Position numbers and translations under genes: made by a program
The notes under the pieces: generated by a model
Seen by the model: the letters and a program-made list of their open reading frames with translations, nothing else
What the model was told of the DNA's origin: nothing
Databases searched by the model: none
Assembly: GCA_026770705.1 (NCBI GenBank)
Contig: JANJGN010000121.1
Span: 1,240,001-1,304,000, forward strand
From: Isurus oxyrinchus
Taxonomy: Eukaryota
DNA length: 64,000 nucleotides
Direction: 5' to 3'
Shown here: positions 2,083 through 50,125 of the stretch, piece by piece
Numbering within the stretch: the first letter of the stretch is position 1
Layout of the letters: each line of letters starts with the position of its first letter

Positions 2083-2430
2083 TGCAGTACTGAGGGAGTT
2101 CCACACTGTCAGAGGGTCAGTACTGAGGGAGTGCTGCACTGTCGGAGGGTCAGTACTGAGCGAGTGCCACACTGTCAGAGCATCAGTACTGCGGGAGTGC
2201 TGCACTGTCGGACGGTCAGTACTGAGGGAGTGCTACACTGTCGGAGGGTGAGTACTGAGGGAGTGCTGCACTGTCACCGGGTCAGTACTGATGGAGTGCT
2301 GTACTGTCGGAGGGTCAGTACAGGGGGAGTTCTGCACTGTCGGAGGGTGAGTACCGAGGGGGTGCTGCACCTTTGGGGGGTCAGTATTGAGGGAGTGCTG
2401 CACCGTTGGGGGGTCTTTGCCGAGTGAGTG
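2083..2430 (-). repeat. 30-bp satellite (cagtgcagcactccctcagtactgaccctccga family)
   Basis: Tandem units, reverse orientation. Confidence 0.9.
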
Positions 2431-3054
2431 CTGCTCTGTCTGAGAATTATCACTTGTATCAAAATGTTTTTAACTTTACTGTTGTTCCCACTTCAGCTGC
2501 AACTGCTCCACATCCCCATGTGTTAACTGGAGCATGTCAGCCTGGAGTTACGTGGAATTGCAGAGCAGAATCTGCTCTCACACATTGAAGCTGGCAATCG
2601 CTAAGTGTCCCTCAGTGATGATGTTTTCTGATGGAATGAAACTTGGCAAAGCCGTGGGTAGTGATAAGGAGAGATTGGGCATGAGAGGGGCAGGATCAGT
2701 GTGAGGTGGGCAGACACATGGCTGATGCAGTTCAGCGCAGTGTCGTGTGAAGTGACGCACTTTGTCAGGATGAATACAGACAGATATTGGACAGTAATGA
2801 TTTGGACAGGTGTAGGTGAGCAGAGACCTGGGCGTCTCTCTGCACTCATTCTGAAAGATTAAAGGACAAATTGTTGAGGTGATGAAGAAAGAAAATGTCT
2901 TCCTTGTGTTAACAGACTGAGGAACCCAGTTAAAAGCAAAGAGATCATGCGGGAACTTTATAAATCACTGGTTAGAACTCAGCTGGAATATTGTTCAGAA
3001 CGCTGGGCTCCACACTTCAGGAAAGATGTAAGAGCTTCAGAAAGGGTGTCCAAG

Positions 3055-3429: not shown

Positions 3430-3890
3430 GGGTGGAGAGGAGATTGAGCAGAATGGGTCCAGGGATGAGGGATTTTAGCTACAAGGTTGGGTTGGAGGAG
3501 CTGGGGTTGTTCTCCTTGGAACAAAGGAGATTGAGGGGGGATCTGATCGAGGTGTACAAGATGATGATGGGTTTAGATAAGGTAGACGAAGAGAAGATGT
3601 TGCCATTAGCTGATGGTACAAGGACCGGGGGACACAGATTGAAGGTTGTGGGTGGGGGGCGATGTGAGGAGGAACTTTTTTACACAGCGAGTGGTAATGA
3701 GCTGGAACTCGCTGCCTACGAGGATGGTGGAAGTGGAGACGATGAACAATTTCAAAAGGAAATTGGACGGACAATTGGAAATAAACTCACAGGGATACGA
3801 GGACAGAGCGGGGGGAATGGGACTGATTGGATTGCTCTACAGAGAGACAGCATGAACTGGATGGGCCAATGGCCTCCTTCTGTGTTCTGA
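3430..3890 (+). mobile_element. CR1-like LINE 3' fragment
   Basis: LGLFSLEQRRLRGDLIEVYK. Confidence 0.85.
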
Positions 3891-8689: not shown

Positions 8690-9585
8690 TCACCCTCCAA
8701 CAGTGCAGATCTCCCTAATTACTGATCCTCCGACAGTGCAGCACTCCCTCAGTACTGACCCTCCGACAGTGCAGCACTCCCTCAGTACTGACCCTGCAAC
8801 AGTGCAGCACTCTTCCAGTACTGACCCTCCGACAATGCAGCACTTCCTCAGTAATGACCCTCCGACAGAGCAGCACTCCCTCAGTACTGAACATCTGACA
8901 GTGCAGCAATCTTCCAGTCCTGACCCTCCAACAGTGCAGCATTCTTCCAGTACTGACCCTCCGACAGTGCAGCATTCCCTCAGTACTGACCCTCCGACAG
9001 TGCATCACTCCCTCAGTACTGACCATCCAACAGTGCAGCACTCCTTCAGTACTGACCATCTGACAGTGCAGCACTCCCTCAGTACTGACCATCCAACAGT
9101 GCTGCACTCCCTCAGTACTGACCCTCTGACAGTGCAGTACTCTCTCAGTACTGACCCTCTGACAGTGCAGCACTCCCTCAGTACTGACCCTCTGACAATG
9201 CAGCACTCTCTCAGTACTGATCCTCCGACATTGCAGCACTCCCTCAGTACTGACCATCCAACAGTGCAGCACTCCATCAGTACTGAACCTCCAACAGTGC
9301 AGCACTCCCTCAGTACTGACCATCCAACAGTGCAGCACTCCCTCAGTACTGACCATCCAACAGTGCAGCACTCCCTCAGTACTGACCCTCCGACAGTGCC
9401 GCACTCCCTCAGTACTGACCATCCAACTGTGCAGCACTCCCTCAGTACTCATTCTCCGACAGTGAAGTACTCGCTCAATACTGACTATGCGGCAGTGCAG
9501 CTTTCACAGTACCCACCCTCCAACAGTGCAGCACTCCCTCAGTACTGACCCTCCGACAGTACAGCACTCCCTCAGTACTGAGCTG
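8690..9585 (+). repeat. 30-bp satellite array (~29 units)
   Basis: TVQHSLSTDP pseudo-ORF. Confidence 0.95.
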
Positions 9586-9712: not shown

Positions 9713-9994
9713 ACACACCACAGAATCTCTCAATTAATTCTCTTGATATGATTAACGTTTCATCGATCAATATAATTGAGGGGTATTCTGCAGTGATAAT
9801 CTGCTCAGTCGAGAGCTTCCCAACTTCTAACCTGACGTGGCGACATCTTAATGTCCCAATGAACAGAACAAGTTCCAACAATGATCTGTGGTTGGTGATT
9901 CCTCACGTTACATCCAGGGACACTGGAGACTATCAGTGTGTGGCAGAGAATGAACATGGAGCAGTGGAGGGGTTCATAACCATCACTGTGGAAC
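9713..9994 (+). CDS. Gene A repeated C2 exon, copy 1 (282 nt)
   Basis: ttcag|...PQNLSI...IICSVESFPTSNLTW...DTGDYQCVAENEHG...TVE|gtgagt. Confidence 0.9.
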
Positions 9995-10473: not shown

Positions 10474-10755
10474 ATGCTCCACAGAACCTCTCAATTACTT
10501 CTCTTGATATGATTAACGCTTCATCGATCAATATAATTGAGGGGAATTCTACAGTGATAATCTGCTCTGTCGAGAGCTTCCCAGCTTCTAACCTGACGTG
10601 GCGTCATCTTAATGTCCCAATGAACAGAACAAGTTCCAACAATGAGCTGTGGTTGGTGATTCCTCACGTTACATCCAGGGACACTGGAGACTATCAGTGT
10701 GTGGCAGAGAATGAACATGGAGCAGTGGAGGGATTCATAACCATCACTGTGGAAC
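10474..10755 (+). CDS. Gene A repeated C2 exon, copy 2 (282 nt)
   Basis: tttag| ... |gtgagt; near-identical to the exons at 9713, 41668 and 42874. Confidence 0.9.
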
Positions 10756-11830: not shown

Positions 11831-12021
11831 GTTATATGTGAATCCTCCTTATAGAAACCTGCATGTACATGGATATTATCAATAAATATTACATAGATAA
11901 ATGTTATTTGTATAGACCTTTCATGCATAGACAATATCACTTCACAAGTTCAGAATTACTACATGTACATAGGGAACCATTCTCAAACTGTACCGGAGTC
12001 ATTCATTGGCTGATTTTACAG

Positions 12022-12118
12022 GGCGAGATTCCAATGAATGGAAAGCAGGATTGCTTGGAGCTGGAATCTGTCTGAGTGTTGGACTGAGTGGATTCTTCAT
12101 CTTCAAGTGTGTGAGAAA
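12022..12118 (+). CDS. Gene A transmembrane exon (RRDSNEWKAGLLGAGICLSVGLSGFFIFKCVRK)
   Basis: ttttacag| ... gagaaa|gtaagt, 97 nt, paralogous to the 47754-47850 TM exon. Confidence 0.85.
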
Positions 12119-13140: not shown

Positions 13141-13491
13141 GGTTAAATTATGCAGACAGGTTACACACAGTCTACGATTATATTCACTCGGGTCTAGAAG
13201 ATTTAGGAGGGATCTAATTGAGGGGTTCAAACTGATTAAACACTCGATAGGGTCGATAGAGAGAAGCTATTCCCTCGGGTGGGGGTGGGTGGTGGGGGTC
13301 GGGTGGAGTCCAGAACAAGGGGGCTGGAACTTTAGATTGGAGCCAGGCCGTTCAGGGGTGATGTCAGGAAGCACTTCTTCACACAAAGGGGAGTGGAAAT
13401 CTGGAACTCTCTCCCCAATAATCAAACCCAACACCGAATACACATCATGTTGATTGTCATTCTGTCCATTTCCATCTCTATTTCGGAAGAG

Positions 13492-13591
13492 AGGTGAGGG
13501 GAAAGCAGGAATCAAATCGAACCACCATGTTGATGAATATCGAGGTCCTGTTTATGAAAACTGTGAGCGTGGTTGGGCTTTGAGGAATCAG
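13492..13591 (+). CDS. Gene A cytoplasmic exon 1 (..GEGKAGIKSNHHVDEYRGPVYENCERGWALRNQ)
   Basis: Strong phase-0 donor CAG|gtgagt. Acceptor is uncertain: tttcgg instead of tttcag; an in-frame GAG| lies at 13489-13491. Confidence 0.6.
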
Positions 13592-13727
13592 GTGAGTCAC
13601 ACACCACAGGATCCCCAGCCTCTCAGCTGCTCCAGTAGCCTGGTTATTGATATGGCTGCTCCAGTCCTGTATCTGCAATGTTTTATACAGTCACTCCCAA
13701 ACCCAACCAAACTCACACCCAACACCA

Positions 13728-15277
13728 TTCAGAATCAATAATCAAACCCCGATCAGAATCAATAATCAAACCCCGTTCAGAATCAATAATCAAACCCCGT
13801 TCAGAATCAATAACACACCCCGTTCAGAATCAATAATCAAACCCCGTTCAGTATCAATAACCAAACTCCGTTCAGTAACAATAATAAAACCCGTTCAGAA
13901 TCAATAATCAAACCCCGATCAGTATCAATAATCAAACCCCGTTCAGAATTAATAATCAAACCCCTTTCAGAATAAATAATCAATCCCCGTTCAGTATCAA
14001 TAAACAAACCACGTTCAGTATCAATAATCAAACCCTGTTCAGAATTAATAATCAAACCCCATTCAGAATCAATAATCAATCCCCGTTCAGTATCAATAAA
14101 CAAACCCAGTTCAGAATTAATAATCAAACCCCGTTCAGAATCAATAATCAAACCGCGTACAGAATCAATAATCAATCCCCGTTCAGTATACATAATCAAA
14201 CCCCGTTCAGTATCAATAAACCAACCCCGTTTAGTATCAATAATCAAACCCCTTTCAGAATCAATAATCAATCCCCGTTCAGTATCAATAAACAAACCCC
14301 GTTCAGAATTAATAATCAAACCCCGCTCAGTATCAATAATCAAACCGCGTTCAGAATCAATAATCAAACCCCGTTCAGTATACATAATCAAACCCCGTTC
14401 AGTATCAATAATCCAACCCCGTTTAGTATCAATAATCAAACCCCATTCAGAATCAATAATCAAACCCCTTTCAGAATCAATAATCAAAACCCAGTTCAGA
14501 ATCAAGAATCAAACACCGTTCAGTATCAATAATCAAACCCCGTTCAGAATCAATAATCAAACACTGTTCAGAATCAATAATCAAACCCCATTCAGTATCA
14601 ATAATCAAACTCCGTTCAGGATCAATAATCAAACACCGTTCAGAATCAATAATCAAACCCCGTTCAATATCAATAATCAAACCCCGTTCAATATCAATAA
14701 TCTAACTTCGTTCAGGATCAATAATCAAACCCCGTTCAGATTCAATAATCAAAACCCTTTCAGAATCAATAATCAAACCCCATTCAGTATCAATAATCAA
14801 ACCCCATTCAGTATCAATAATCAAACCCTGTTCAGAATTAAAAATCAAACCTGTTCAGTATCAATAATCTAATCCCGTTCAGAATCAATAATCAAACCCC
14901 GTTCAGAATTAAAAATCAAACCCCGTTCAGTATCAATAATCTAACCCCGTTCAGTATTAAAAATCAAACCCCGTTCAGTATCAATAATCTAACCCCGTTC
15001 AGTATCAATAATCAAACCCCATTCAGTATCAATAATCAAACCCCGTTCAGAATCAATAATCAAACCCTGTTCAGTATCAATAATCAAACTACGTTCAGGA
15101 TCAATAATCAAACTCCGTTCAGATTCAATAATCAAAACCCATTCAGAATAAATAATCAAACCCTTTTCAGAATCAATAATCAAACCCCGTTCAGAATTAA
15201 AAATCAAACCCCGTTCAGAATCAATAATCAAACATCGTTCAGGATCAATAATCAAACCCCGTTCAGTATCAATAATT
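13728..15277. repeat. 24-bp minisatellite (cagaatcaataatcaaaccccgtt), about 64 units
   Basis: Direct tandem periodicity; fills the last intron of gene A. Confidence 0.95.
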
Positions 15278-15375
15278 AATGTCTCTACTGTGGATGGAAT
15301 TTTTTGATTTGGATCAATAATACTAAACACTGATCACTCTGATTGTCACTCTGATCATTTCTGTTTCTATTACAG

Positions 15376-15492
15376 AAGAAAGATGAGAAGGATCTGGAAA
15401 TGAAATCTAACCGCGGAGTCAATCCTGATACAGATGATGATCTTTACGCAAACTGTGAATTTGCCAAGGATTCTGTTTATGGGAATTTATAA
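15376..15492 (+). CDS. Gene A terminal exon (KKDEKDLEMKSNRGVNPDTDDDLYANCEFAKDSVYGNL*)
   Basis: tacag| phase 0; LYAN motif and terminal SVYGNL ITIM; AATAAA at 16267. Confidence 0.75.
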   Translation, partial: KKDEKDLEMKSNRGVNPDTDDDLYANCEFAKDSVYGNL

Positions 15493-16819: not shown

Positions 16820-17345
16820 TGAGAGGAGGACATTCAGCTCCTCGAGCCTGTTACACAGGAACAGGAGGAGGCCCAGTCTGTTCCCTTAAGCCTGTTACAC
16901 AGGAACAGGAGGAGGCCCATTCTGTCCCCTTGAACCTGTTACACAGGAACAGGAGGAGGCCTATTCACCCTCCTCGAGCCTGTTACACAGGAACAGGAGG
17001 AGGCCCATTCACCCTCCTCGAGTCTTTTACAGAGGAACAGGAGGAGGCCCATTCTGTCCCCTTGAACGTGTTACACAGGAACAGGAGGAGGCCCATTCAC
17101 CCTCCTCGAGCCTGTTACACAGGAACAGGAGGAGGCCCATTCTGTCCCCTTGAGCCTGTTACACAGGAACAGGAGGAGGCCCATTCACCCTCCTCGAGCC
17201 TGTTACACAGGAACAGGAGGAGGCCCATTCTGTCCCCTTGAGCCTGTTACACAGGAACAGGAGACCCATTCAGCCTCCACAAGCTTGTTACACAGGAACA
17301 TTAGGGGCTCCATTCAGCCACTCAAGCCTGTTCCACATGAACGGG
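16820..17345. repeat. ~40-bp minisatellite (gagcctgttacacaggaacaggaggaggcccattc...)
   Basis: Tandem units resembling the reversed CR1 3' tail. Confidence 0.9.
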
Positions 17346-17349
17346 AACA

Positions 17350-18180
17350 AAAACAAAAATAGCTGGAAAAACTCAGCAGGTCTGACAGGATCTGTGGAGA
17401 GGAACACACTTGACGTTTTGGGTCTGTATGACTCTTCATCAGAACTAAGGGAATCGAGAAATGAGGTGATGTTTTAGCTGGTAGAGGGGGTGGGGCAGGT
17501 AGAGCTGGATTGTGGGCCAGTGATAGGTGGAGGTAAAGAAGAGGTTGCCAAAGATGTGATAGACAAAAGGACAAAGGGGTGTTGACGGTGGTGATATTAT
17601 CTGAGGAAGGTGCTAATGGGGACATTAAGGGTAGAAAGCAGGACGAGCAAGAGACAGATAGTCCTAGTGGGGGTGGGGTGGGGGGAAAGGATTGAAATAG
17701 GCTAAAAGGTAGAGATACAACAACAGATGTAAAACATTTAAAAATAATGGAAAAATGTGGGAAAAGAAAAATATATAAATAAAAAAAATATTAAAACTGA
17801 TAAATTAATGGAAAAGGGAGATTGGAAAGGGAGTGGGAATGGAGGAGAGAGTTCATGATCTGAAAGTGTTGAACTCAATATTCAGACCGGAAGGCTGTAA
17901 AGTGCCTGGTCGGAAGATGAGGTGTTGTTCCTCCTATTTGTGTTGGGCTTCACTGGAACAATGCAGCAGGCCAAGGACGGACATGTGGGCATGAGAGCAG
18001 GGTGGGGTGTTAAAATGGCAAGCGACAGGGAGGTCTGGGTCATGCTTGTGGACAGACCGAAGGTGTTCATCAGAGCGATCACCCAGTCTGTGTTTGGTCT
18101 GTCCCATGTAGAGGAGACCACATTGGGAGCAGTGAAGGCAGTAGATTAAATTGAGGGAAGTGCAAGTGAAACGCTGCTTC
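17350..18180 (-). mobile_element. Penelope-like element 3' fragment
   Basis: Nearly the same sequence as 43500-44330 (GIY-YIG C-terminus); splits the 40-bp array. Confidence 0.8.
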
Positions 18181-18194
18181 CAATGATGCTCCTA

Positions 18195-18690
18195 ATGTAC
18201 TCGAGCCTGGTACACAGGAACTGGGGAAGGCCAATTCAGCCCCTTTAGCCTTTTACACAGGAACAGGAGGAGGCCCACTCAGCCCCATGAGCCTGGTACA
18301 CAGTGAGAGAAGGAGGCCATTCAGCCCCCATGAGCCTGTTACACAGGAACAGGAGGAGGCCCATTCAGCCCCTCGAGCCTTTTACACAGGAACAGGAGGA
18401 GGCCCATTCAGCCCCTCGAGCCTTTTACACAGGAACAGGAGGAGGCCCATTCAGCCCCTCGAGCCTGTTACACAGAACCAGGAGGAGACCCATTGTGCCC
18501 CATGAGCCTGTTACACAGAAACAGGAGGAGGCCCATTCAGCCCCTCGAGCCTGTTACACAGGAACAGGAGGAGGCCCATTCTGTCCCCTTGAACCTGTTA
18601 CACAGGAACAGGAGTAGGCCCATTCACCCTCCTCGAGCCTGTTACACAGGAACAGGAGGAGGCCCAGTCAACCCCTCGAGCTTGTTGCAT
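18195..18690. repeat. ~40-bp minisatellite, continuation
   Basis: Same unit as 16820-17345. Confidence 0.9.
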
Positions 18691-18724: not shown

Positions 18725-18955
18725 GCACGCAAAGGGTTAACAGTTTTCTAACAGTGCGAGGCAAAGAGCATCTTTCTCACTTGGTACCAAGCACTTCCTC
18801 ATTTTGTCTCACAGTGACACATCCACCCTTTTTAATTAAACACAAATAGGGAGCAGCACAGGAAGAGGTCATTCAGCCCAAGCAGAGCGTGTGGGCAGTT
18901 CCTCCCCAGGCGAGCAGTCGGACAGGTCCGGGGTAAGTAACGGAATGATTGGAAA
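18725..18955 (+). promoter_or_regulatory. Copy 2 of putative promoter/non-coding first exon
   Basis: ACTTCCTC and CAGGAAG ETS-type sites; donor at 18933. Confidence 0.5.
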
Positions 18956-20008: not shown

Positions 20009-20069
20009 ATGGAATATCTGGGAGTGGACAATGATCGGGAAATCTACTTCCTCTTGTCACTTCTCCAAG
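20009..20069 (+). pseudogene. Gene B signal-peptide exon
   Basis: Paralogue of 26772-26811. The ATG at 20031 is 1 nt out of frame; the ATG at 20009 gives MEYLGVDNDREIYFLLSLLQG|gtaata. Confidence 0.7.
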
Positions 20070-20772
20070 GTAATATCATCGTCAGCTTGGACAGATTTAT
20101 ATTTAACAGTCTTTGTAAAAGATCATTCTTATCTCTTTATCTCTGTAACCTCCTGCAATGCAACCAATCAACTTCCCAGATCTCTGTGTTACTCCAAATC
20201 TGGCCTCTTGACCATCCCCCAATTCCCATCACTCCAATACTGGCGGCCGTGCCTACAGCTGCCTGGGACCTGAGCTCTGGAATTCACTCCCTAAACCTCG
20301 GCGATGGAGGAGATCAGAGGGTTTCATTTTACTGAGAATCACCACGACCACATCACAGCTGCAGTGAGAATAGACAGAGAGTCCAGCCCTCACACTTCCT
20401 GCACAGTTTCACCATAGCAACCACAATATGGAAATTTAAAAATACTGAAAGTTAAACTGAAGCTCAGCCCATTCAGTGTTGAGAGATGAGATATTTACAC
20501 AGTTTCCCTGTGTATCTTGTAGACACTGTGTTGGATGGAAGACTGGCTTCACTAAACAGGGTCCTGAGGACCATGAGCCAATGTAGAATGAACTTGTCCA
20601 CTCCTGAGTCCAGGATTCTCTTCTATCTGTTGTGAAACCTTGGGGAGTTCCTTGTGTGTCCTGTAGATGGTCCACACTGCAGCCACTGTGCCCCAGTGAT
20701 GGAGGGGGTGGATATCGAGTCTAGTGGATCTACAAACCATCCAGAGTCAAATATTGATATTTCTCTCCCCCG

Positions 20773-21146
20773 TTGGACTGTCACAAGAGTGGAAAGGTGA
20801 CACTCCACGAGAGGTGACAGCACAGGAAGGTTCATGTGTACAGATTCCATGTCATTACAGTTACTTATCAAATTTCGTAGGGAGATCACGTGCAGAATCT
20901 GGTTGAAAGGAATAGATGGGAACCCACAGCCTAAATGGTCTATAGCCTTTCACTCCGAGGGTCACAATCACAGGGATCAAAGATTCCGCCATCGTACCCG
21001 GCTGTCTGGAGACCTGAAAGATGGTGACTGTTCCCTGATTATAAACAACATCAGACGGGAAGATGCAGGACCTTATTTTTTCAGAATAGAGTTTGACAGC
21101 AGGAATAGTTACAGCTACTATCCTGTAACCCAGCTTCACGTTTCTG
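20773..21146 (+). pseudogene. Gene B V-set exon (retains YFFR; frameshifted)
   Basis: Acceptor reads cccccg rather than cccag; length 374 nt, implying a 1-nt deletion near 20895; donor |gtaagt intact. Confidence 0.85.
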
Positions 21147-21669
21147 GTAAGTGCTGTGTTATAATTACTCAACAATTCACAACCAACACTCAATGGGAAA
21201 TAACACAAACTGTGACGTTTACATAATAACACAAAACACAGCTTATTATAACACACTGTCTGATTCTCAATAACCTGGTGATAGCTTCCAGTTCAGTCCT
21301 AAAGCAACCTCTAAAAATCACTTTAATATCAATGATGAAAAGCATTAACTGTACCGACATCTTTCATTCTACATCAGCACTCCCTCAGCGCTGACCCTCT
21401 GACAGTGCAGCCCGTTCTCAGTATCCACATTCTCAGGCCACTCAAAGTGCTTCACAGTCGATAGAAGTTAATTGATCTTTATTTGATTATTGCTGAATGA
21501 AGAGACAAGCTGTCTAAACTTCTCATATCGCAAACAGCATTCTCCACGGCAACACCTCCACCTATCAGAGACCACTTGCCAACCAATCAGCACTGTCTTT
21601 CCATTAAGTATAAATTGTTGTTCACTTTCTGTTGGTAATCGTGCGAACGGGGTTCTTGATTCCTGCCAT

Positions 21670-21822
21670 GACATCTGAATGTCCAAATGAACAGAAGAAG
21701 TTCCAACAATGAGCTGTGGTTGCTGATTCCTCACGTTACATCCAGGGACACTGGAGACTATCAGTGTGTGGCAGAGAATGAACATGGAGCAGTGGAGGGG
21801 TTCATAACCATTACTGTGGAAT
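21670..21822 (+). pseudogene. Gene B 5'-truncated copy of the 282-nt C2 exon
   Basis: Only HLNVQMNRRSSNNELW...TVE|gtgagt remains; the 5' half is replaced by unrelated sequence 21487-21669. Confidence 0.8.
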
Positions 21823-23485
21823 GTGAGTGTACACAGACTTCAACATCTCTCTCAGATTCGAATACTACACAAACACCCTCAAACGTACAGACCTAAATAG
21901 ACACGTGCAGACACACATATATGACCACACACAAAGACACACTCACAAACAAACACACTAGCACAAGACTCCCTCATGGGTTATCTGACCTCCCTCAGTA
22001 CTGCACTGGAGCGTGGGCTGAATTCTGGGATTTGTGTTCCCATTCATATTTATGGAAGAATATGGAAATTACTCGTACAAACACTCAGATGCATAGAGGC
22101 ACTCATAGATACTCTCTGCTTCTCCAACTCTCTCTCTCCCTTTAAGGAGCTACCTGAAACCTAACCCTTTGACGAATAACTAGTCCCAACTCCTCTTTAT
22201 CTGATTCTGTGATTTTTTTGTGAATCTGAGAGTAAGAGAGAGGTGGAGAGGTTTAGTAAGAGAATTCCTGCTGATGAAAAGCTTACATCCTGTTCTCACT
22301 ATTTCCGTGCCCATTATGTCCAAAGCCCCTGTTTATAGTGATGACTGCCTATGTAAACGTCACACTGTAGTTACAGCCTCCCACCAGTGGTGGCATTGTA
22401 GCACTTAATCCTTGTGTTTCCCAGCTTTTCAAGCAAATCTACTTCCCAGTTTGCTACACAAGCTGGGAGTTCATCGGAATTCAATTATTTCTCAAACGGT
22501 AGATTTGATAATTCATTTTATTGAAAACTTCCTCAGCACCTCCCTGAAGTGTTTACACTCTCCGGGAAGCAGGAATAGGCTGGATGTTGGGGAGTTCATC
22601 TTTTCCTTGAGAGTAGTGATCCTCGGGAATGTGCTGTCAGTGGGTGTGGTCGTTCCTGTTTCTCTGTCGCCTTCAAGAGGGATCTGGAGTGGTTACTGAC
22701 TGGGGGAGAGATCATGGAAGCAGAGAATGATACAGCACAGGAGGAGGCCATTCAGCCCATTGTGCCTGTGCCAGGTCTTTCAATGTTCTATCCAATCAGA
22801 TCCACTAACCACCACTCCACTTTGCCCCCACCTTCTTCCTTCAAGTGTTTATCCAATTCCCCTTTTGAAAGTTCCTATTGAATCTGCTTCCACCGCCCTT
22901 TCAGGCAGCACCTTCCAGATCACAACAACTCGCTCTGTCAAAACAAATTCTCCTCATCTCCCCCTCCGGTTCGTCAATCTGTGCCCCTCTGGTTACCGAC
23001 CCTCCTGCCCCTTAAATACATCGATACTGTTCACCTCAACCACTCCCTGTGGGAGTGAGTTCCACATTCTCCCCTCTCTCTGGGTAAAGATTGGAACTGT
23101 TTATTTAGCGGGGTGTGTAAGTCCGTGGGGGAGTCCATCTCGATCCTGCCCGATTCGCACACGCATCCGAGATGGATTTCCACCCTGCACTAAACATTTC
23201 CAGAATTTTCTACAGCACAATCCTGTACACAGCGATGGAGAGAAACATTGGACAGGGAGTCCAACAGCACAATGATCCATTCTCACCAATGTTCCACGCT
23301 AAGGGGAAAGTTCCGATTGTCCACTCTTGGAGTGTTTACAATGAAAACATTCATTCCACATTGAATCCCAGTGGATGGGTCAATATTACAGCAAATGTTG
23401 CAGTGTTATGAAGCTTGATTGTTCAGCCAGAGTGAGAGATTGAAAGTGGAGAGTCAGTGATGATTTCTTTCTGTGTGTTCTCTAG

Positions 23486-23625
23486 ACAGTGGAGGAGAGA
23501 TTCTGCACGTGATCCTGATCCTGGGAATACGAGCTGTGATATTCCTTGTGGCTGTGGTTATCACTATCACTGGAGTCTGTGTCTGGGAGAGACAAACAGT
23601 GAAAGGAAGTCGACAGACTGTTTGA
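23486..23625 (+). CDS. Gene B terminal TM exon with intramembrane Arg and short tail (YSGGEILHVILILGIRAVIFLVAVVITITGVCVWERQTVKGSRQTV*)
   Basis: tctag| phase 1; about 27 hydrophobic residues with one Arg; stop at 23623-23625; no cytoplasmic Tyr. Confidence 0.8.
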
Positions 23626-23749
23626 AGCTTTGTACAGCAACAATCTGGTCAGTCAGTGCGGACAAATAATGTGTGATGTTGGGTTAAGTTGCAATGAAAC
23701 TGGTCAGTGTCCTGGTTAAAATCACCTTCGTATCAGAGAGGCATTCCAG

Positions 23750-24335
23750 CACAGTGGGAGCCCATTCAGCCCATTGAGTCCATGCTGTCTCTCTGTAGAG
23801 CAATCCACTCAGTCCCATTCCCCCTCTCTATCCCCGTATCCCTGTGAGTTTATTTCCCCTCAAGTGTCCATCCAATTTCCTTTTGAAATTGTTCATCGTC
23901 TCCGCTTCCACCATCCTCGTAGGCAGTGAGTTCCAGCTCATTACCACTCGCTGTTTAAAAAAGTTCCTCCTCACATCCCCCTCTGCCCAAAACCTTCAAT
24001 CTGTGTCCCCCAGTCCTTGTCCCATCAGCTAATGGCAACAGCTTCTCTTTGTCTACCGTATCTAAACCCATCATCATCTTGTACACCTCGATCAGATCCC
24101 CCCTCAATCTCCTTTGCTCCAAGGAGAACAACCCCAGCTTCTCCAACCCAACCTTGTAGCTAAAATCCCTCATCCCTGGACCCATTCTGCTCAATCTCCT
24201 CCCCACCCTCTCAAGGACCCTCACTTCCTTCCCAAAGTGAGGAGACCAGAACTGGACACAATACTCTAGTTGTGACCTAACCAGAGCTTTATAAATGTTC
24301 AGCATAACCTCCCTGTGTTTGTACTCAATCCCTCG
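23750..24335 (-). mobile_element. CR1-like LINE 3' fragment
   Basis: LEYCVQFWSP...LGLFSLEQRRLRGDLIEVYK; close to the 3430-3890 copy. Confidence 0.85.
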
Positions 24336-24564
24336 ATTTATGAAAAGCTTATTCTTTCCATCAGCACAAACAGCAATTTCCAAGCGGACTCCCATCAGCA
24401 GACAGAGTGCAATGAAACATCGGCATGCCTGCTTCTTAATGTACGGAGAGAAACCTGGAACGAGAGATTCTCCTTCTTCTCCTCAGCAAGCTGAAACTTT
24501 TCCTTATACCTGGTGCTCCCCAGTCCTGCTGTGTGGACACATCATAACCACGGCATTGTCTGGC

Positions 24565-25960
24565 TGTGTGCAGCACTACCTCGGTACACACCTTCTGACA
24601 GTGCAGCACTCCCACAGGACTGATCTTCTGACACTGTATCCCTCCCTCACTACTGACCTTCCAACAGTTCAGCACTCCCTCAGTACTGACGATCCCACAG
24701 TGCAGCACTCCCTCAGTGCTCACCCTCCCACTGTGCAGCCCTCCCTCAGTACTGACGCTCCCACAGTGCAGCACTCCCTCAGTACTCACTCTCCCACAGT
24801 GCAGCCCTCCCTCAGTACTCACTCTCCTGAAGTGCTGTGTGAGTTGTTTCAATCAAGACTGATGCCCAAAGAGGGAGGTTTCATTGCTAAATCATTGAAA
24901 TCGTTGAAAATTATTTTTAGGCTAACGGGAACAAGACTTAGTTCCTCAAATCCTTTCTTTTGCAATAACACACAGTACAAGACTCTCTGTTTAAATAAAT
25001 TCCAGTTAAACTTTGCCATGAAAGGATATCTCCTCACGCTCCACTCTACCTCAGTACTAACCCTCCCACTGTCCAGCACCCCCTCAATAATGACCCTCCG
25101 ACTGTGCGGAACTCACTCAGTACAGACCCGCCGACAGTTCAGCACTCCCACATTACTGATCCTGTGACAGTGCAGCACTCCCTCATTACTGATCCTGTGA
25201 CAGTGCAGCACTCCCACATTACTGACCCTCTGACAGTGCAGCACTCCCTCAGTACTCACTCTCCCACAGTGCAGCACTCCCTCAGTACTCACACTCCCAC
25301 AGTGCAGCACTCCCTCAGTACTCACACTCCCACAGTGCAGCACTCCCTCAGTACTGACCCTCTCACAGTGCAACACTCCCTCAGTACTCACACTCCCACA
25401 GTGCAGCACTCCCTCAGTTCTCACCCTCCCACAGTGCAGCATTCCCTCAGTACTCACCCTCCCACAGTGCTGTGCGAGTTGTTTCAATCAAGACTGGTGC
25501 CCAAAGAGGGAGGTTTCAATGCTAAATCATAGAAATCAGTGAAAATTATTTTTAGGCTTACGGGAACAAGAGTTAGTTCCTCAAATCCTTTCTTTTGCAA
25601 TAACACACAGTACTGTTTAAATTCTGTTTAAATAAATTCCAGTTAAACTTTGTCATGAAAGGATATCTCCTCGCACTCCGCTCTACGTCAGTACAAACCC
25701 TCCCACAGTCCGGCACCCCCTCAATACTGACCCTCCACCTGTGCGGAACTCACTCAGTACAGACCCTCTGACAGTGCAGCACTCCCTCATTACTGACCCT
25801 ATGACAGTGCAGCACTCCCTCAGTACTGACCCTCCGACAGTGCAGCACTCCCTCAGTACTGACCCTCTTACAGTGCAGCACTCCCTCAGTACTGACCCTC
25901 TGATAGAGCAGCAATCCCACAGTAAACTCCCGCTGACAGTGCAGCACTCCCTCCGTAATG
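24565..25960 (+). repeat. 30-bp satellite arrays with a duplicated unique spacer
   Basis: 24830-25140 is repeated at 25466-25770. Confidence 0.9.
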
Positions 25961-26179
25961 ATAACAGGGATCGTTGAAATGTATCATAAGGCCAGAGACC
26001 TATATTAGGAACTCTTATCGCCTGAGTTTCAGCCTCCGAGGTGAGGGGGAGGAGTCTAAACCCACGGAGCCAATGGAGAAGCTTCATGACTACAGCTGCC
26101 CAAATTTGAGCTGACAGATCATCACATGGTAAACGTTTTGCTGAGAGCACAAAACATCCTCGATCTTCTCACTGGTTAC

Positions 26180-26730: not shown

Positions 26731-26771
26731 GTTTGAGAGTCAGAAGCTTATGAAATATCTGGGAGTGGACA

Positions 26772-26811
26772 ATGATCGGGAAATCCTACTTCCTCCTGTC
26801 ACTTCTCCAAG
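26772..26811 (+). CDS. Gene C signal-peptide exon (MIGKSYFLLSLLQ)
   Basis: ATG at 26772; phase-1 donor CAAG|gtaata. Confidence 0.8.
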
Positions 26812-28499
26812 GTAATAACATCATCAGCTCGGACAGGTTTATGGCTAATAGTCTTTGTAAAAGATCATTCTTATTGAGTGTGATTGGGAACCGATTCAGC
26901 AGTGATCCAGTGTACAAACTGACACCAAGTCCCATTCACCCATCACCCCTGTGCTCACTGATATACACTGACTCCCTGTCTGACAGCAGAATTGGAGGAG
27001 AGCAGAGATCTCAGAGGGTTTTAGGGTTGGAGGAGGTTACAGGGATTGGGAGTGTAGAGGGGGGATGGTGGGGTAAGAAATCGATGATGAGAATTTGAAA
27101 TTTGAGTCATTGCTGGACTGGGAGGCAGTGTAGTTCATCCAGTGACAGGGGAGCGATCGGCTGAATAGAGAATCAGGGATACCAACTGGGGGATGAAGTC
27201 TATCCTGATGCTGGGACTCGGATAACAATGCCCTGAAATTTTGTGTCTATTGCTGATTTTAGTCAGAATTTCCCATGAAGACAACACAGCAGCTCCTAGA
27301 ATAGACAGGCTGTTCAGTGTCACACTTACTGTCCATTCTCACCATGCTAGATACTTCAATAAGGGAGCAAGATAACTGAAAGAGAGAAGGAAGGTAAAGC
27401 TGTCTGTGTGTAAAGGTGTCAAATATTCTGAGTTATCATGATTGTCTCTGATCTGCTGCAGTGTTTAAAGTTCTCAGAACATTAGCACTTTGCAGCTCAG
27501 AGAGAGACCATTGACTCACTGCTTGAAAGGCTGGTGGCAGCAGATTCAACAGGAACTTTCAGAAGGGGAACTAGATAAATACTTGAAGGGGACATTTTGC
27601 AGGGCTGTGGAGGAGAGAGCAGAGGTTAGAGTGGGACTAATTGGACAGATCTTTCAAAGGCCCAGCACAGGCTCGATGGGCCAAATGGCATCCTTCTATT
27701 CCGGATCATTCTACAATCTGATAAATTAAGACCCACTCTTCAGTAACTCTTCAGGCTCCTGCTGCAGGGATGGATCTTTGAGAAGGACAGGGAACAAGAG
27801 GTTCCTGGTATCATTTTCATATTTCTTGACAATTACATAAGTGTATAGATCTGTTGAATATTTGAGTCTCTAAAGCGTAGAGGTAATCTGCTGTTATGTC
27901 GAGATCTTGTGGTGGCAAAATTGTCTGGAGGTTTCTTTAATTGCTCACATTGATCTGTGGGATTGTCATTCTTTGATGTTGTCCCTGGTTTCAATTGACA
28001 TTACACCCTTGATGCAATTGAGAAGGCTTTAAAGTAATATAGCAGGGGATGGGATCCCGAGAGGAAGTTCAACAGAGAGAGATGCACAGCCAAAATTAGA
28101 AGAGAGCAAATGAACCTGGAAGGCATAGAAATTATTGGCCATTTAAGGCTCAAGATAGCGTGGCAAAGTTGGATTGTATTAATTTTAATGCAAGGAGTCT
28201 GACAGACTTGCATTCTCCTGCAGGTGTAATGTTGCAGCTCCCATGAAACTGCCAATATTGTTGAATCTTTCTGCATATTTCAATGTTATGTCATGAACTG
28301 AGTTTATGGGATAGTTTCTGAGACTGGGACAGACATAAATCCATTGGCTTTCAGCCGGACCAGACAATCTTGGAAGTGGGTGGGGCCAGAAAATCCCACC
28401 CCTATGGGAACATTTTCAGTTTATTTGATGTGCCCAGAGAGATCAATAAAGACCACAATCCACAATTTATTGGCAAGCCACGTCAGGATATGTGTGAGA

Positions 28500-32095: not shown

Positions 32096-32473
32096 TTGGA
32101 TTGTCACAAGAGTGGAAAGGTGACACTCCACGAGAGGTGACAGCGCAGGAAGGTTCGTGTGTACAGATTCCATGTCATTACAGTTATCCATCAGATTTGG
32201 TAAAGAAACCCCAGGTCGGAATCTGGAAAATGAGAAGATACATACAGAACAAATGGTCTAAATGGTCTATAGCCTTTCACTCCAAGGGTCACAGTCGCGA
32301 GTTATCACAGTTCCACCATCGGACCCGGCTGTCTGGAGACCTGAAAGATGGCGACTGTTCCCTGATTATAAACAACATCAGACGGGAAGATGCAGGATCT
32401 TATTTTTTCACGATAAAATTTGGCAATGGTCCGAGACATAACGTTTCCCCTGAAACCCAGCTTCACGTTTCTG
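32096..32473 (+). CDS. Gene C V-set exon 1 (YFFT, no essential Arg)
   Basis: cccag|(V)GLSQEW...CVQIPC...GDCSL...DAGSYFFTIKF...LHVS|gtaagt; 378 nt, open. Confidence 0.9.
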
Positions 32474-35669: not shown

Positions 35670-36038
35670 ATAAACCCTCACAAGAGTGGAAAGGTGACAG
35701 TCCACGAGAGGTGACAGCACAGGAAGGTTCGTGTGTACAGATTCCATGTCATTACAGTTATCCATTGTGTCCGGAAAACCAACCGCGAGGTGGAGTCTGG
35801 TTTAATAATGAGAAACAGATTCCCTGGGCTCCCATTGCCTTTCACTCCAAGGATCACAGTCACGAGTTACCACGGTTCCACCATCGGACCCGGCTGTCTG
35901 GAGACCTGAAAGATGGCGACTGTTCCCTGATTATAAACAACATCAGACGGGAAGATGCAGGAACTTATATTTTCAGAATAGAATTTGACAATGGTCCGGG
36001 CCATAACTATTACCCTGTAACCCAGCTTCACGTTTCTG
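35670..36038 (+). CDS. Gene C V-set exon 2 (YIFR, Arg retained)
   Basis: cccag|(D)KPSQEW...CVQIPCHYSYPLC...DAGTYIFRIEF...LHVS|gtaagt; 369 nt, open. Confidence 0.9.
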
Positions 36039-36500: not shown

Positions 36501-36845
36501 AATGCCGGTTCAGTGATTGGTTCAAATGGATTCTCTCCTGCTGGGAACAGGATAGAATTTAAATCTGGCAGATTTCGGAGAAAGTAACAAGCCAGTGTGT
36601 CAGGAACTGTGAGCTGATCCCCCACCCTCACCCGTCAATTCAATTGTCTCAAAGTGGAAGTGAATTCATCTGAGTGACTGAAACTCCACTAAGTCTGAAA
36701 ATAGGAAAGTCTCTCCTGATCGTTGTAATCTCTCAGTTCTGATATCATCCTTGTAAAAGTGCTTTTTCTTGTGGGACTGTGATTTCTATTTGAACTGATG
36801 CTTCACGTTATATTTCTCTAAAAGGATCCATTCTCTGTCTGTTAG

Positions 36846-37142
36846 ATTTCACAGATAAACCCATGATATTCCCTGCTGAAATTATTGCAGGGAAGCGTGT
36901 GGATGTAAGCTGCACCTTCAACACAACGTGCAATGGAACAGCAGCACCTGTCTTAACCTGGGACACTCCCACTGATGTACCTGGATCAGTCTCAAACACT
37001 GTAACTCAGCATGGTGTCACTCTGACCTATACTTCTGTTCTGACCCTGATCCCATCACTCAAACACCACGGACACACTCTCAGCTGCAGAGTGAGATATC
37101 CATCTGTTTCATCGGAGCGGACCCTTGTACTAACTGTACAAG
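36846..37142 (+). CDS. Gene C Siglec C2-set exon (DFTDKP...CTFNTTC...SVLTLIPSLKHHGHTLSC)
   Basis: Typical Siglec domain 2 with the extra B-C loop Cys; GT-AG, phase 1-1. Confidence 0.9.
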
Positions 37143-41667: not shown

Positions 41668-41949
41668 ATGCTCCACAGAATCTCTCATTTACTTCTCTTG
41701 ATATGATTAACGCTTCATCGGTCAATATAATTGAGGGGAATTCTGCAGTGATAATCTGCTCTGTCGAGAGCTTCCCAGCTTCTAACCTGACGTGGCGACA
41801 TCTTAATGTCCCAATGAACAGAACAAGTTCCAACAATGAGCTGTGGTTGGTGATTCCTCACGTTACATCCAGGGACACTGGAGACTATCTGTGTGTGGCA
41901 GAGAATGAACATGGAGCAGTGGAGGGGTTCATAACCATCACTGTGGAAC
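41668..41949 (+). CDS. Gene C repeated C2 exon (282 nt)
   Basis: cttag| ... |gtga; near-identical to 10474-10755. Confidence 0.9.
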
Positions 41950-42873: not shown

Positions 42874-43155
42874 ATGCACCACGGAACCCATCAATTACTT
42901 CTCTTGATATGATTAACGCTTCATCGATCAACATAATTGAGCGGAATTCTGCAGTGATAATCTGCTCTGTCGAGAGCTTCCCAGCTTCTAACCTGACGTG
43001 GCGACATCTTAATGTCCCAATGAACAGAACAAGTTCCAACAATGAGCTGTGGTTGGTGATTCCTCACGTTACATCCAGGGACACTGGAGACTATCAGTGT
43101 GTGGCAGAGAATGAACATGGAGCAGTGGAGGGGTTCATAACCATCACTGTGGAAT
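42874..43155 (+). CDS. Gene C repeated C2 exon (282 nt)
   Basis: tttag| ... |gtgagt. Confidence 0.9.
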
Positions 43156-47753: not shown

Positions 47754-47850
47754 GTAGAGACTCCAGTAAATGGACAGTAGGATTGTTCACGGCTGGGATC
47801 ATGTTGAGTGTTTTCCTGGCTGGAATCTTCATCTTCATCTGTGTGAGAAA
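47754..47850 (+). CDS. Gene C transmembrane exon (GRDSSKWTVGLFTAGIMLSVFLAGIFIFICVRK)
   Basis: tacag| ... |gtaagt; uncharged TM. Confidence 0.88.
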
Positions 47851-48649: not shown

Positions 48650-49844
48650 GTACAGGAGCTGTTTACACTCACTCCAAAGCTTCACTCTCAGTGTGTAGAC
48701 AACACATATCCCAGATTCCCAGCCCAGTTACCCACTGATTTGTACCTGTGGAGTCAGCAATGGTTCAGTATCATGCTGTCTCTCTGTTATGACACAGCAA
48801 CTGGTAAAGGCTGTTGTTTAAAATCCCAGAGGGAAACTTTAAACAACTGTCATAACCTATATTTCCCAGTGGAATGTTTGAGATGCAGCTCTAAATTCAG
48901 GAATAAGAGCACCAGTTCTCGACATGGGTCTTATATCAAACTACATGAGACATTTATTAATTTACACAAGTTAAACATATGCACATGGCTACAAGCTAGC
49001 ATTATCATAACTTTTTAACAAATTCCGAAACTAATCTCCTCAAAGATAACCCATAGAATTTAAGCAGATTCCAGGCAAAGCATTTTCACCTCACAAATTC
49101 CAAATGAGGTTCCTTTCACTTTGGTTCCTTTGCAGACAAGTGTAGGCTTACAGCTGCTTTGCTGTTACAAGCGTCTGCTCTGCACACACAAAACTGCTCA
49201 AGTTATACCCAGCTCTTGAGTGTAAAGAAGACGGAGAATGATACGCTCTTGATTGGTCAGGGGATCAATGGTTAGGAGAGAAGGTGGGAGACTGGGGTTT
49301 GTGAAACATATCAGCCATGTATGAATGGTGGAGCAGACTCGATGGACCGAATGGTCTAATTTCTCCTCCTATGTCTGATGGTCTTATGGCTTCTGTTTGA
49401 AGGTAAATTCGCAATGTATCATCAGGACCTTTGAACTCCATCTCTTCCAATAATAAATCCCCTTTCATCGTATCAATTTTATTAGTAATATAAACGTTGA
49501 TTGGTTTAAGATTTCACTCTCAGACTTTGAATGTTTTATTTAAAAATGCAAATTACCACTTTACCTCTTTGTTTACATCTCAAAACTACTATACATCAAA
49601 ACACACAGACTGGCTGTCTTTAATCCAATTTAAATACACACAGACACACACACAGACTAAACCTCTGTTTAAAAAGACAGTTTGCAATTACATTACATAC
49701 ATTAATAGATTCATAACACTCTGTCTCTATCCCTCCTCTATCCCTCTCTCTCATCCTCTCTCTGATTACAAGGTTCATGTTATTGAGCCTCACACCAGGC
49801 ACCTGTGTGCAGAATCCAAGCCGTCACTCACCAGAGCCATTACC

Positions 49845-50125
49845 GAGGGAGTGCGGGACTGACAGCGGGTCAGTACTGAGGGAGTGCTGCACTGTTGGAG
49901 GGTCAGTACTGAGGGAGTGCTGCACTGACAGAGGGTCAGTACTGAGGGAGCGCTGTATTGTCGGAGGGTCAGCACTGAGGGAGTGCTGCACTGTTGGAGG
50001 GTCAGTACTGAGGGAGTGCTGCACTGTCAGAGGGTCAGTACTGAGGGAGCGCTGTATTGTCGGAGGGTCAGCACTGAGGGAGTGCTGCACTGTTGGAGGG
50101 TCAGTACTGAGGGAGTGCTGCACTG
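49845..50125 (-). repeat. 30-bp satellite
   Basis: Tandem units. Confidence 0.9.

What the first reader, a model, noticed from the sequence alone, without database searches (positions are those of the whole stretch)
23486..23625. Hidden activating-type TM exon (Arg in membrane, short Tyr-free tail)
Not called by the ORF track. Read in phase 1 from tctag it gives ILHVILILGIRAVIFLVAVVITITGVCVW-ERQTVKGSRQTV*. It is unrelated to the TM exons of A and C, and it remains open although upstream gene B exons are damaged. A basic TM residue is the established signature of DAP12/FcRgamma association.
Basis: partly seen in the sequence, partly recalled or inferred. Interest (0 to 1): 0.8.

Follow-up and report, generated by a model that had tools for sequence, protein, structure and literature searches.

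The report
Shark activating-type receptor membrane exon, orphaned
This is a real copy of a conserved shark exon that gives Siglec-like immune receptors a membrane anchor with a buried arginine and almost no tail (the usual build of an activating receptor), but in this stretch the gene in front of it is damaged, so this copy is probably a leftover.

Summary
After a pyrimidine tract and AG (23484-85), 23486-23625 reads in phase 1 as a 29-residue hydrophobic stretch with one Arg and a 12-residue tail without Tyr. It is the most hydrophobic stretch in the window outside simple repeats.

It is not chance. A search of 1.84 billion proteins found 8 real relatives, all matching at their extreme C-terminus. 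With cluster members, 25 shark models from 8 species carry it, and the Arg is kept in 25 of 25. Their outer parts are Siglec/CD33-like, CD22-like and SLAM-like.

RNA-type contigs use its acceptor. The exon is therefore internal, and the stop lies 22 nt before the donor.

In this window the upstream gene B is damaged in five ways. The spliced contig's upstream part does not come from gene B. This copy is most likely the relic of a decayed activating partner of inhibitory genes A and C.

The cassette already sits in public automatic annotation. This scan found it before on other DNA of this genome.

The parts
23486..23647 (+). Membrane cassette exon (162 nt). The coding part is 23486-23625, phase 1 in. 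It holds a 29-residue hydrophobic stretch with Arg (codon 23530-23532) and a 12-residue tail without Tyr.
   Evidence: Homologues. X5 contig record 31 lies on 23484-23647 only, with 1 other letter.
23623..23625 (+). Stop codon TGA, 22 nt before the donor. It sits at the same place as in the catshark and great white models that end ...KGSRQTV.
23648..24364 (+). Intron (GT..AG, 717 nt) in the 3' untranslated part.
   Evidence: X1 has a loose end behind 23647; its 30 letters match 24365-24394 exactly; tttccatcAG lies just before 24365.
24365..25015 (+). Downstream untranslated exon. Its start is shown. Its end is inferred from AATAAA at 24994. Its first 31 nt lie antisense to a LINE reverse-transcriptase-tail ORF (23955-24395, minus strand), and it runs into a 33-bp minisatellite.
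   Evidence: The 3' end is not shown by reads.
20009..20069 (+). Gene B leader exon. It has a 1-nt deletion against gene C's leader (26772-), which puts the usual start (MIGKS...) out of frame. An upstream ATG at 20009 is in frame with the hydrophobic part.
20773..21146 (+). Gene B V-set exon, damaged. The acceptor place reads CG (20771-72) instead of AG, and a 1-nt frameshift lies at 20892/93. It carries the Siglec-type YFFRIE motif.
   Evidence: Pfam V-set E 1.8e-08 and Ig_CD22 E 1.6e-04. X1 contigs exist with and without an extra T behind 20892.
21670..21826 (+). Remnant of a C2-type Ig exon. Only the 3' 157 nt are kept. The 5' 125 nt and the acceptor are replaced by unrelated sequence.
   Evidence: against the intact 282-nt copies at 9713-9994, 10474-10755, 41668-41949 and 42874-43155.

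Best explanation
23486-23647 is a genuine copy of a membrane cassette exon shared by many shark Ig-superfamily receptors. It encodes a single membrane helix with an invariant Arg in the block ILGIRA, followed by a 12-residue tail with no tyrosine. The expected mechanism is inferred from how such receptors work in mammals, not shown here. The buried Arg would pair with an acidic residue in the membrane helix of a separate ITAM-bearing adaptor chain of the DAP12 / FcR-gamma / CD3-zeta class. Ligand binding by the outer Ig domains would then give an activating signal.

In this window the cassette closes gene B: leader 20009, V 20773-21146, C2 remnant 21670-21826. Gene B is the activating partner in a cluster with inhibitory Siglec-like genes A and C, and gene C's tail carries LLYANI and TEYAQI. 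In this assembly gene B has five lesions, so this copy is most likely the still-intact relic of a decaying activating gene. The cassette's splice sites are the ones used in transcripts of the same or a near-identical copy.
For: The exon is real and conserved. phmmer of the 45-residue peptive against 1,835,955,588 proteins gave 9 hits at E<=1e-3. Eight are Ig-superfamily proteins matched at their very C-terminus (E 3e-13 to 4.4e-05) and one is repeat junk. With the word searches and cluster members there are 25 cassette-bearing proteins, and the alignment including the window has 17 distinct tails. ILGIRA, IF and G.CV are invariant, and no tail has Tyr. The sources are RefSeq/GenBank models of Scyliorhinus torazame, S. 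canicula, Chiloscyllium punctatum, Hemiscyllium ocellatum, Rhincodon typus, Mustelus asterias and Carcharodon carcharias.

Splicing. X5 record 31 is 850 nt long. It lies only on 23484-23647, with 163 of 164 letters alike, and has 390 and 296 unlike letters on its two sides. X5 depth is 0 in the intron bins from 23137 to 23374. An X1 contig goes from 23647 to 24365. Both runs hold exon-exon joints of paralogues, V-V in X1 and C2-C2 in X5, so they behave as RNA.

Gene B is damaged. Gene C is inhibitory: its tail motifs lie at 50390-50476.
Against: No read ties the cassette to the gene B exons. No joint from 21146 or 21826 to 23486 is among the 15 joints shown; 9 more were not shown. X5 depth is 0 on 20400-21351 and is below the contig's own depth on 21709-21827. 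The 296 upstream letters of the spliced contig therefore come from elsewhere. Their length fits the 297-nt C2-1 exon that typical activating members have and that gene B lacks.

The runs are coded and labelled 'RNA? (a guess)'. Their contigs differ from the window by 1.5-4.4% in introns. They may be another haplotype, a paralogue or a sister species.

The 'dead gene' reading is weakened by X1. Two of its contigs (depth 15.7 of 20.4) carry an extra T behind 20892 that makes the V exon one open frame. An AG 15 nt downstream of the lost acceptor (20786-87) would also keep the frame.

Adaptor coupling is not shown for any shark receptor.
Confidence: 0.7

Rival explanations
1. The cassette is in use at this locus. 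Either gene B is functional on other haplotypes, as a presence/absence or null-allele polymorphism, and makes a short leader-V-membrane receptor. Or the exon is taken up by alternative splicing from an Ig exon of gene A, which is also phase 1.
For: X1 holds both forms of the gene B V exon, with the extra T (depth 15.7) and without it (record 3, depth 4.6). The two V pieces are each open, and the added base links their frames. A V-to-membrane build exists in the whale shark model P0006. The V exon's donor and the cassette's acceptor are both phase 1. The cassette, both its splice sites and its stop are intact.
Against: The leader, the acceptor and the C2 lesions remain. No joint from 21146 to 23486 was listed. 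X5, which has the cleanest spliced contig, has depth 0 on the V exon. A gene A C2 exon upstream of the cassette would have cross-laid on 21670-21826 (94% alike), and the depth there excludes that for the X5 contig. An intact 140-nt exon is expected by chance even in a dead gene: the 374-nt V exon shows only 2 lesions, so about 0.75 would be expected here (inference).
Confidence: 0.25
2. The exon codes in the other open frame. The frame from 23487 is open across the whole exon and for a further 44 codons into 24365 and beyond, so the membrane-like reading would be incidental.
For: That frame has no stop between 23487 and 23647. It is the frame the ORF list shows (23457-23669).
Against: All 25 homologous protein models use the membrane frame and end in it. 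The membrane frame has the top hydrophobicity score in the window. Ig-superfamily exons of this cluster are phase 1. I did not search the other frame's peptide against any database.
Confidence: 0.02
3. Chance: an open frame of 46 codons that merely looks hydrophobic and is not an exon.
For: A frame of 46 open codons alone is common, at about 1 in 9 by codon arithmetic (inference). Pfam has no family for the peptide; the best matches have E 0.15 and 0.2.
Against: E 3e-13 to a catshark protein, with the same C-terminal position in 8 of 8 real hits. Contigs are spliced at both edges.
Confidence: 0.01

Closest known systems
Automatic RefSeq models of shark Siglec/CD33-like proteins that end in the same cassette. 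Examples are great white XP_041037231 (P0011) and XP_041037190 (P0014), cloudy catshark XP_072325011 (P0001) and XP_072326180 (P0002), and small-spotted catshark 'Siglec-14' XP_038669859 (P0028).
   Same: The same cassette: 93% identity to P0011 and 82% to P0001. The same split codon before SGGE, the same Arg block, and the same stop after ...SRQTV.
   Different: Those models have intact leader, V (one or two), C2-1 and membrane parts. The window's copy follows damaged Ig exons and has no C2-1 exon in front of it. No protein in the collection has the window's exact tail in the length ranges searched. The names are by similarity only, and no function has been tested.
Human activating Siglecs: Siglec-14 (paired with Siglec-5), Siglec-16 (paired with Siglec-11) and Siglec-15.
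   Same: A Siglec-type V-set outer part, a basic residue in the membrane helix, a short tail without ITIM, and inhibitory neighbours with closely similar V domains. DAP10/12 coupling of Siglec-14/15/16 and the conserved membrane Lys of Siglec-15 are stated in PMC7226832 (passages read). The non-functional SIGLEC16P is named in PMC5701461 (start of the abstract in a search listing only); the SIGLEC14 null allele is recalled and comes from no call.
   Different: There is no sequence relation between the shark cassette and the mammalian membrane exons that I could test, since a comparison would need sequences I may not type from memory. The shark cassette is also found on CD22-like and SLAM-like outer parts. 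The adaptor is unknown.
Paired activating/inhibitory Ig-superfamily receptor families of lower vertebrates: teleost NITR and LITR, and skate MDIR. These are recalled. The MDIR term was met only in the search listing of PMC3031540.
   Same: Multigene clusters in which activating members have a charged membrane residue and a short tail, and inhibitory members have ITIM tails.
   Different: The outer domains are different. No sequence comparison was done here.

Membership tests
Shark 'ILGIRA' membrane cassette (C-terminal exon of RefSeq shark Siglec/CD33-like, CD22-like and SLAM-like models) | Sequence homology over the whole cassette, with the invariant block ILGIRA.IF and G.CV | tested here: met
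   phmmer gave E 3e-13 and 4e-11 for the two best hits. All invariant columns are present in the window copy.
Shark 'ILGIRA' membrane cassette (C-terminal exon of RefSeq shark Siglec/CD33-like, CD22-like and SLAM-like models) | Phase-1 acceptor directly after an Ig exon, and a stop inside the cassette | tested here: met
   AG at 23484-85 followed by 2 bases of a split codon. TGA lies at the same place as in P0001, P0002 and P0011.
Shark 'ILGIRA' membrane cassette (C-terminal exon of RefSeq shark Siglec/CD33-like, CD22-like and SLAM-like models) | An intact Ig ectodomain gene in front of it | tested here: not met
   Gene B has a shifted leader, CG at the V acceptor place, a V frameshift, a half C2 exon and no C2-1 exon. 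The frameshift is absent from 2 X1 contigs.
Activating-type immune receptor coupled to an ITAM adaptor (DAP12 / FcR-gamma class) | Single membrane helix with a basic residue inside it | tested here: met
   A 29-residue hydrophobic run with Arg at its 11th place and a Kyte-Doolittle mean of 2.93.
Activating-type immune receptor coupled to an ITAM adaptor (DAP12 / FcR-gamma class) | Short cytoplasmic tail without tyrosine-based motifs | tested here: met
   The tail ERQTVKGSRQTV has no Tyr. None of the 26 aligned tails has one.
Activating-type immune receptor coupled to an ITAM adaptor (DAP12 / FcR-gamma class) | Physical association with an adaptor chain through the basic residue | not testable with these tools
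   This needs co-expression and co-precipitation. Akula 2014 (PMC4016189, passages read) found no FcR-gamma chain in cartilaginous fish. An unchecked first-reader note of this scan (s1-869613) reports an FcR-gamma-like gene in this genome.
Siglec (I-type lectin) family | N-terminal V-set domain of the Siglec/CD22 type with the conserved Arg in the F-strand motif | tested here: inconclusive
   The gene B V exon matches V-set (E 1.8e-08), and Ig_CD22 below its cut-off (22.5 bits against 27). It reads YFFRIE, but the exon is frameshifted in this assembly. That this motif marks the sialic-acid Arg is recalled knowledge.
Siglec (I-type lectin) family | Binding of sialic acid | not testable with these tools
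   This needs a glycan binding assay.

The most novel reading that the evidence does not exclude
The cassette may be a shark-wide, exon-shuffled 'activating module' that at least three unrelated Ig receptor families (Siglec/CD33-like, CD22-like, SLAM-like) have picked up. That would imply one common adaptor partner, in a lineage where the FcR-gamma chain was reported missing. At this locus the activating member may be a presence/absence or null-allele polymorphism, with a frameshifted and an in-frame V exon both seen in one run. That would mirror the polymorphic loss of human SIGLEC14 and SIGLEC16, and would suggest that pathogen-driven paired-receptor dynamics of Siglecs date back to cartilaginous fish.
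Probability: 0.25. Interest if true: 0.55.

Novelty: new member of a known kind. Interest (0 to 1): 0.3.

Why it matters
The copy itself adds little. It is one more, probably dead, member of a cassette family that public automatic annotation already shows and that this scan has met on at least six other pieces of the same genome.

The family behind it deserves a proper description. A teleost study states that fish genomes lack CD33-related Siglecs (PMC7226832, passages read; it holds no mention of sharks). My three literature searches found no paper on shark Siglec-like receptors with a charged membrane residue. Sharks nevertheless have large clusters of Siglec-like genes with both ITIM-tailed and Arg-membrane members.

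This window shows the two kinds side by side, with the activating one decaying. That is the pattern known from primate Siglec pairs.

Tried and rejected
Pfam scan of the peptide: no family, best E 0.15.

A paralogue of the cassette in the window: none by tblastn or blastn.

Helical periodicity of conservation, to look for an Arg-centred interaction face. There was no signal at 100 degrees: 3078 of 5000 permutations reached the observed power, and the strongest power was at 145 degrees. I make no claim about an interaction face.

Finding the protein model of this very copy. Three word searches scored on the tail of P0001, P0002 and P0014 covered candidate lengths 120-383, 356-1132 and 149-472 aa. 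They returned 6, 2 and 5 proteins, none with the window's exact tail. The tool sees only those length ranges.

I therefore have no nucleotide-level comparison and no dN/dS.

Literature on adaptors in sharks. A search for 'DAP12' with 'elephant shark' gave one unrelated preprint. Akula 2014 reports no FcR-gamma in cartilaginous fish. I did not check the adaptor genes myself.

The idea that the X5 contig's upstream part is gene B's V or C2 exon was rejected on the depth table.

Reading intron depth in X1 as expression was also rejected. Record 8 starts inside an interspersed repeat (22661-23136, very high depth in three runs), which inflates its mean depth.

The species was not settled. Window exons are 90-98% identical to great white proteins and none is identical. 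The run organisms are coded.

Supplements were not opened. Supplementary file 9 of the whale shark paper (PMC8455134) lists Ig gene families including Siglecs and may bear on the 'not in print' statement.

The cassette, the V pieces and the C2 exon were each searched or translated apart.

Full report
WHAT IS THERE. A pyrimidine-rich tract ends in AG at 23484-85. The exon starts at 23486 with two bases that complete a split codon (phase 1, the rule for Ig-superfamily exons). The frame from 23488 gives SGGEILHVILILGIRAVIFLVAVVITITGVCVWERQTVKGSRQTV, followed by TGA at 23623-25.

The hydrophobic run (I5 to W33 of that peptide) is 29 residues long, with one Arg at its 11th place. The tail has three basic residues and no Tyr. 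In a 21-residue Kyte-Doolittle scan of all six frames, this stretch scores 2.93. That is the best value in the window outside TG/CA-type simple repeats. The next real candidate (2.6, at 47783) is the ordinary uncharged membrane exon of gene C. The ORF list at 60 aa or more does not contain this frame. Pfam knows no family for the peptide. There is no second copy in the window.

THE SURROUNDINGS. The window is a cluster of Siglec/CD22-like receptor genes of a shark.
- Gene A has a V-set exon at about 1640-1957, further Ig exons, and two 282-nt C2 exons at 9713-9994 and 10474-10755. Its tail exon ends ...SVYGNL at 15472.
- Gene C has a leader at 26772, two V-set exons (32096-32473 and 35670-36038), a C2-1 exon at 36845-37141, and C2 exons at 41668-41949 and 42874-43155. 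Its membrane exon is 47754-47850, and its tail carries LLYANI and TEYAQI at 50390-50476. Gene C is therefore an inhibitory type.
- Gene B lies between them: leader 20009-20069, V exon 20773-21146, a C2 remnant at 21670-21826, and then the cassette.

Gene B is damaged in five ways:
1. The leader has a 1-nt deletion against gene C's leader. The usual start is out of frame with the hydrophobic part, though an upstream ATG is in frame.
2. The V acceptor place reads CG where both gene C V exons have AG.
3. A 1-nt frameshift at 20892/93 splits the V exon into two open pieces.
4. There is no C2-1 exon.
5. The 5' 125 nt and the acceptor of the C2 exon are replaced by unrelated sequence.

IS THE EXON REAL? 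Yes. I searched the cassette peptide alone, with no exon joined to it, against one representative of each 50% cluster of about 15 billion proteins. Nine proteins had E<=1e-3. One (P0008, ten short stretches in a repeat protein) is noise. The other eight are Ig-superfamily proteins of 167 to 812 residues, and in all eight the match is the extreme C-terminus.

Word searches scored on the tails of three of these proteins, plus two cluster look-ups, added more. In all, 25 proteins carry the cassette, 12 of them great white models. Aligned with the window copy, they give 26 rows and 17 distinct tails. L6, ILGIRA, IF, V23, G29 and CV are invariant. The Arg is present in 26 of 26, and no tail has a Tyr.

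[quoted passage not shown] The species are Scyliorhinus torazame, S. canicula, Mustelus asterias, Carcharodon carcharias, Chiloscyllium punctatum, Hemiscyllium ocellatum and Rhincodon typus. These are names by similarity from automatic annotation.

Pfam on seven of them shows three kinds of outer part: V-set/Ig_CD22 plus C2 (Siglec-like), eight Ig_2/I-set domains (CD22-like), and a two-Ig build without Ig_CD22 (the SLAM-like ones). The cassette is therefore a module shared between receptor families. The usual activating Siglec-like build is leader, V (one or two), C2-1, cassette. The whale shark model P0006 goes from V straight to the cassette.

The window copy is closest to the great white tails, at 93% with three residues different. 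The collection holds no protein with exactly the window's tail in the length ranges the word search can see.

READS. The one run search listed no run on record as RNA. Several were 'RNA? (a guess)' and held 31-47% of the sampled words. I laid X1, X5, X18 and X19 on 20400-23950 at 90% likeness. All four are Logan contigs.

In X5, an 850-nt contig (record 31, depth 86.8) lies only on 23484-23647, with 1 other letter. It has 390 unlike letters on the downstream side and 296 on the upstream side. X5 depth is 0 in the intron bins from 23137 to 23374, and the neighbouring bin values are exactly what this one contig gives.

In X1, the exon bin has depth 2272 against 293-609 beside it. One contig leaves the exon at 23647 with 30 letters that match 24365-24394 exactly. 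That place is preceded by tttccatcAG, while 23648 begins GTCAGT.

The exon is therefore internal (162 nt). The stop lies 22 nt before the donor, and a 717-nt intron sits in the untranslated part. The next exon starts at 24365, antisense to a LINE fragment, and an AATAAA at 24994 is a likely end.

Both runs also hold contigs with exon-exon joints of paralogues. X1 has a V end joined to a V start with 8 letters between. X5 has a C2 end joined back to a C2 start. This is internal evidence that they are RNA. X18 covers 23184-23646 without a break (7 other letters), as DNA would.

WHICH GENE USES IT? This is the weak point. No joint from 21146 or 21826 to 23486 is among the 15 joints shown, and 9 more were not shown. 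X5 has depth 0 on the whole V region. On 21709-21827 its depth is 58, below the 86.8 of the spliced contig. The 296 upstream letters of that contig are therefore not gene B's V or C2 exon. They are also not a gene A C2 exon, which is 94% like 21670-21826 and would have been laid there.

Their length (294 nt before the exon start) fits the 297-nt C2-1 exon of the usual activating build, which gene B lacks. The contigs of organism A differ from the window by 1.5-4.4% in the flanks (records 1, 3, 5, 6, 8) but by 1 in 164 in the exon. The simplest reading is that the spliced contigs come from a near-identical copy, another haplotype or a sister species. They show how this exon type is spliced. They do not prove that this copy is used.

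The scan's earlier notes say the same genome holds the cassette on at least six other pieces, one of them also behind a dead gene.

IS GENE B REALLY DEAD? Probably, in this haplotype, but not certainly.
- In X1, two contigs (depth 15.7 of 20.4) carry one extra T behind 20892, and one contig (record 3, depth 4.6) does not.
- By frame arithmetic, one added base there links the two open V pieces...FVGRSR and RIWLKG.... This gives the family's usual pattern at that place. I did not build the changed sequence.
- An AG 15 nt downstream of the lost acceptor (20786-87) would keep the frame at the cost of five residues (read; inference).
- A V-to-cassette joint would be in phase.

A short activating receptor from another allele is therefore possible (rival 1). 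On the other side, an intact 140-nt cassette is no evidence of use. The 374-nt V exon has only two lesions, so less than one would be expected in the cassette (inference).

MECHANISM. What follows is inferred from established knowledge of mammalian receptors and is not shown here. A basic residue inside the membrane helix of a short-tailed receptor pairs with an acidic residue of a dimeric ITAM adaptor (DAP12, FcR-gamma, CD3-zeta class), and the adaptor signals. For Siglec-14, -15 and -16 this is stated in PMC7226832 (passages read).

The position of the Arg does not tell which adaptor is used, because the hydrophobic run is longer than one membrane span. A conservation-periodicity test gave no interaction face. 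Akula 2014 (PMC4016189, passages read) found no FcR-gamma chain in cartilaginous fish. An unchecked first-reader note of this scan reports an FcR-gamma-like gene in this genome. I tested neither.

COMPARISON AND NOVELTY. The build works like human Siglec-14 or -16 next to Siglec-5 or -11. The non-functional SIGLEC16P is named in the start of the abstract of PMC5701461, which I saw in a search listing only; the human SIGLEC14 null allele is recalled and comes from no call.

By sequence the cassette belongs to a shark family that is present in RefSeq but, in my searches, not in print. Searches found no paper on shark Siglec-like receptors with a charged membrane residue. The whale shark genome paper mentions Siglecs once, in a list. 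PMC7226832 says fish lack CD33-related Siglecs but deals with teleosts only. Supplements were not seen.

This copy is a new member of a known kind, and most likely a relic. This scan has found the same cassette before on other DNA of this genome, and the follow-ups there reached the same reading.

I therefore have no homologous genomic loci, no dN/dS and no helix model. Read laying allowed one call, so the upstream letters of the spliced contig remain unseen.

Noticed in passing
window 20892-20893 (gene B V exon): Run X1 holds two contigs with an extra T behind 20892 (depth 15.7 of 20.4) and one without it (depth 4.6). The extra base would make the V exon one open frame. This could be an allele, a very recent paralogue, or a 1-nt slip in the assembly.
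   Followed up: partly
window 20009-20069 and 26750-26830: The leader exons carry two overlapping starts. An upstream ATG (MKYLGVDNDRE... in gene C, closed by a stop) overlaps the usual start MIGKSYFLLSLLQ in another frame. In gene B a 1-nt deletion swaps which ATG is in frame with the hydrophobic part. Bamboo shark CD22-like models (P0004, P0005) start with the upstream form.
   Followed up: partly
window 50390-50476: The tail exon of gene C holds an ITIM (LLYANI) followed by TEYAQI, the two-motif tail typical of inhibitory CD33-type Siglecs. Gene A's last exon ends ...LYANCEFAKDSVYGNL (15472).
   Followed up: partly
window 24365-24395, against the minus-strand ORF 23955-24395: The untranslated exon downstream of the cassette starts inside a LINE reverse-transcriptase-tail fragment, read antisense. 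A repeat fragment has been taken up as an exon. 23750-24208 is 92% like 3430-3884 on the other strand.
   Followed up: partly
window 2085-2444, 8692-9581, 24568-25961, 49841-50132, 61032-61352: One 33-bp minisatellite (unit like ACCCTCCGACAGTGCAGCACTCCCTCAGTACTG) sits in both orientations in introns and flanks all over the cluster. A short piece lies at 21375-21423, just before gene B's broken C2 exon. It could be a substrate for the rearrangements seen.
   Followed up: no
window 18849-18929, with 11918-12023, 13487-13591 and 15373-15489: The tail of the great white inhibitory model P0027 matches four window exons at 90-100%, but in a different order. The piece at 18849 falls between pieces at 12.0 and 13.5 kb of the protein. 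This points to a stray duplicated tail exon just upstream of gene B.
   Followed up: no
window 54339-55926; also 13721-15276 and 16823-18686: There is a 1.6-kb CACCCC-type simple repeat (GC 0.715, strong strand skew), a 24-bp array of 65 copies, and 43/44/88-bp arrays between genes A and B.
   Followed up: no
proteins P0014 and P0027 (great white): An activating model (270 aa, cassette tail) and an ITIM-tailed model (499 aa) sit in one 90%-identity cluster. Paired receptors with near-identical outer parts therefore exist in the great white annotation.
   Followed up: partly
protein P0016 (Scyliorhinus torazame, 987 aa): This is a model with at least five tandem Siglec-type V-set domains before C2-1 and the cassette. 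It ends ...VWETNS, so some models leave the cassette early by a donor after VWE. P0009 does the same.
   Followed up: no
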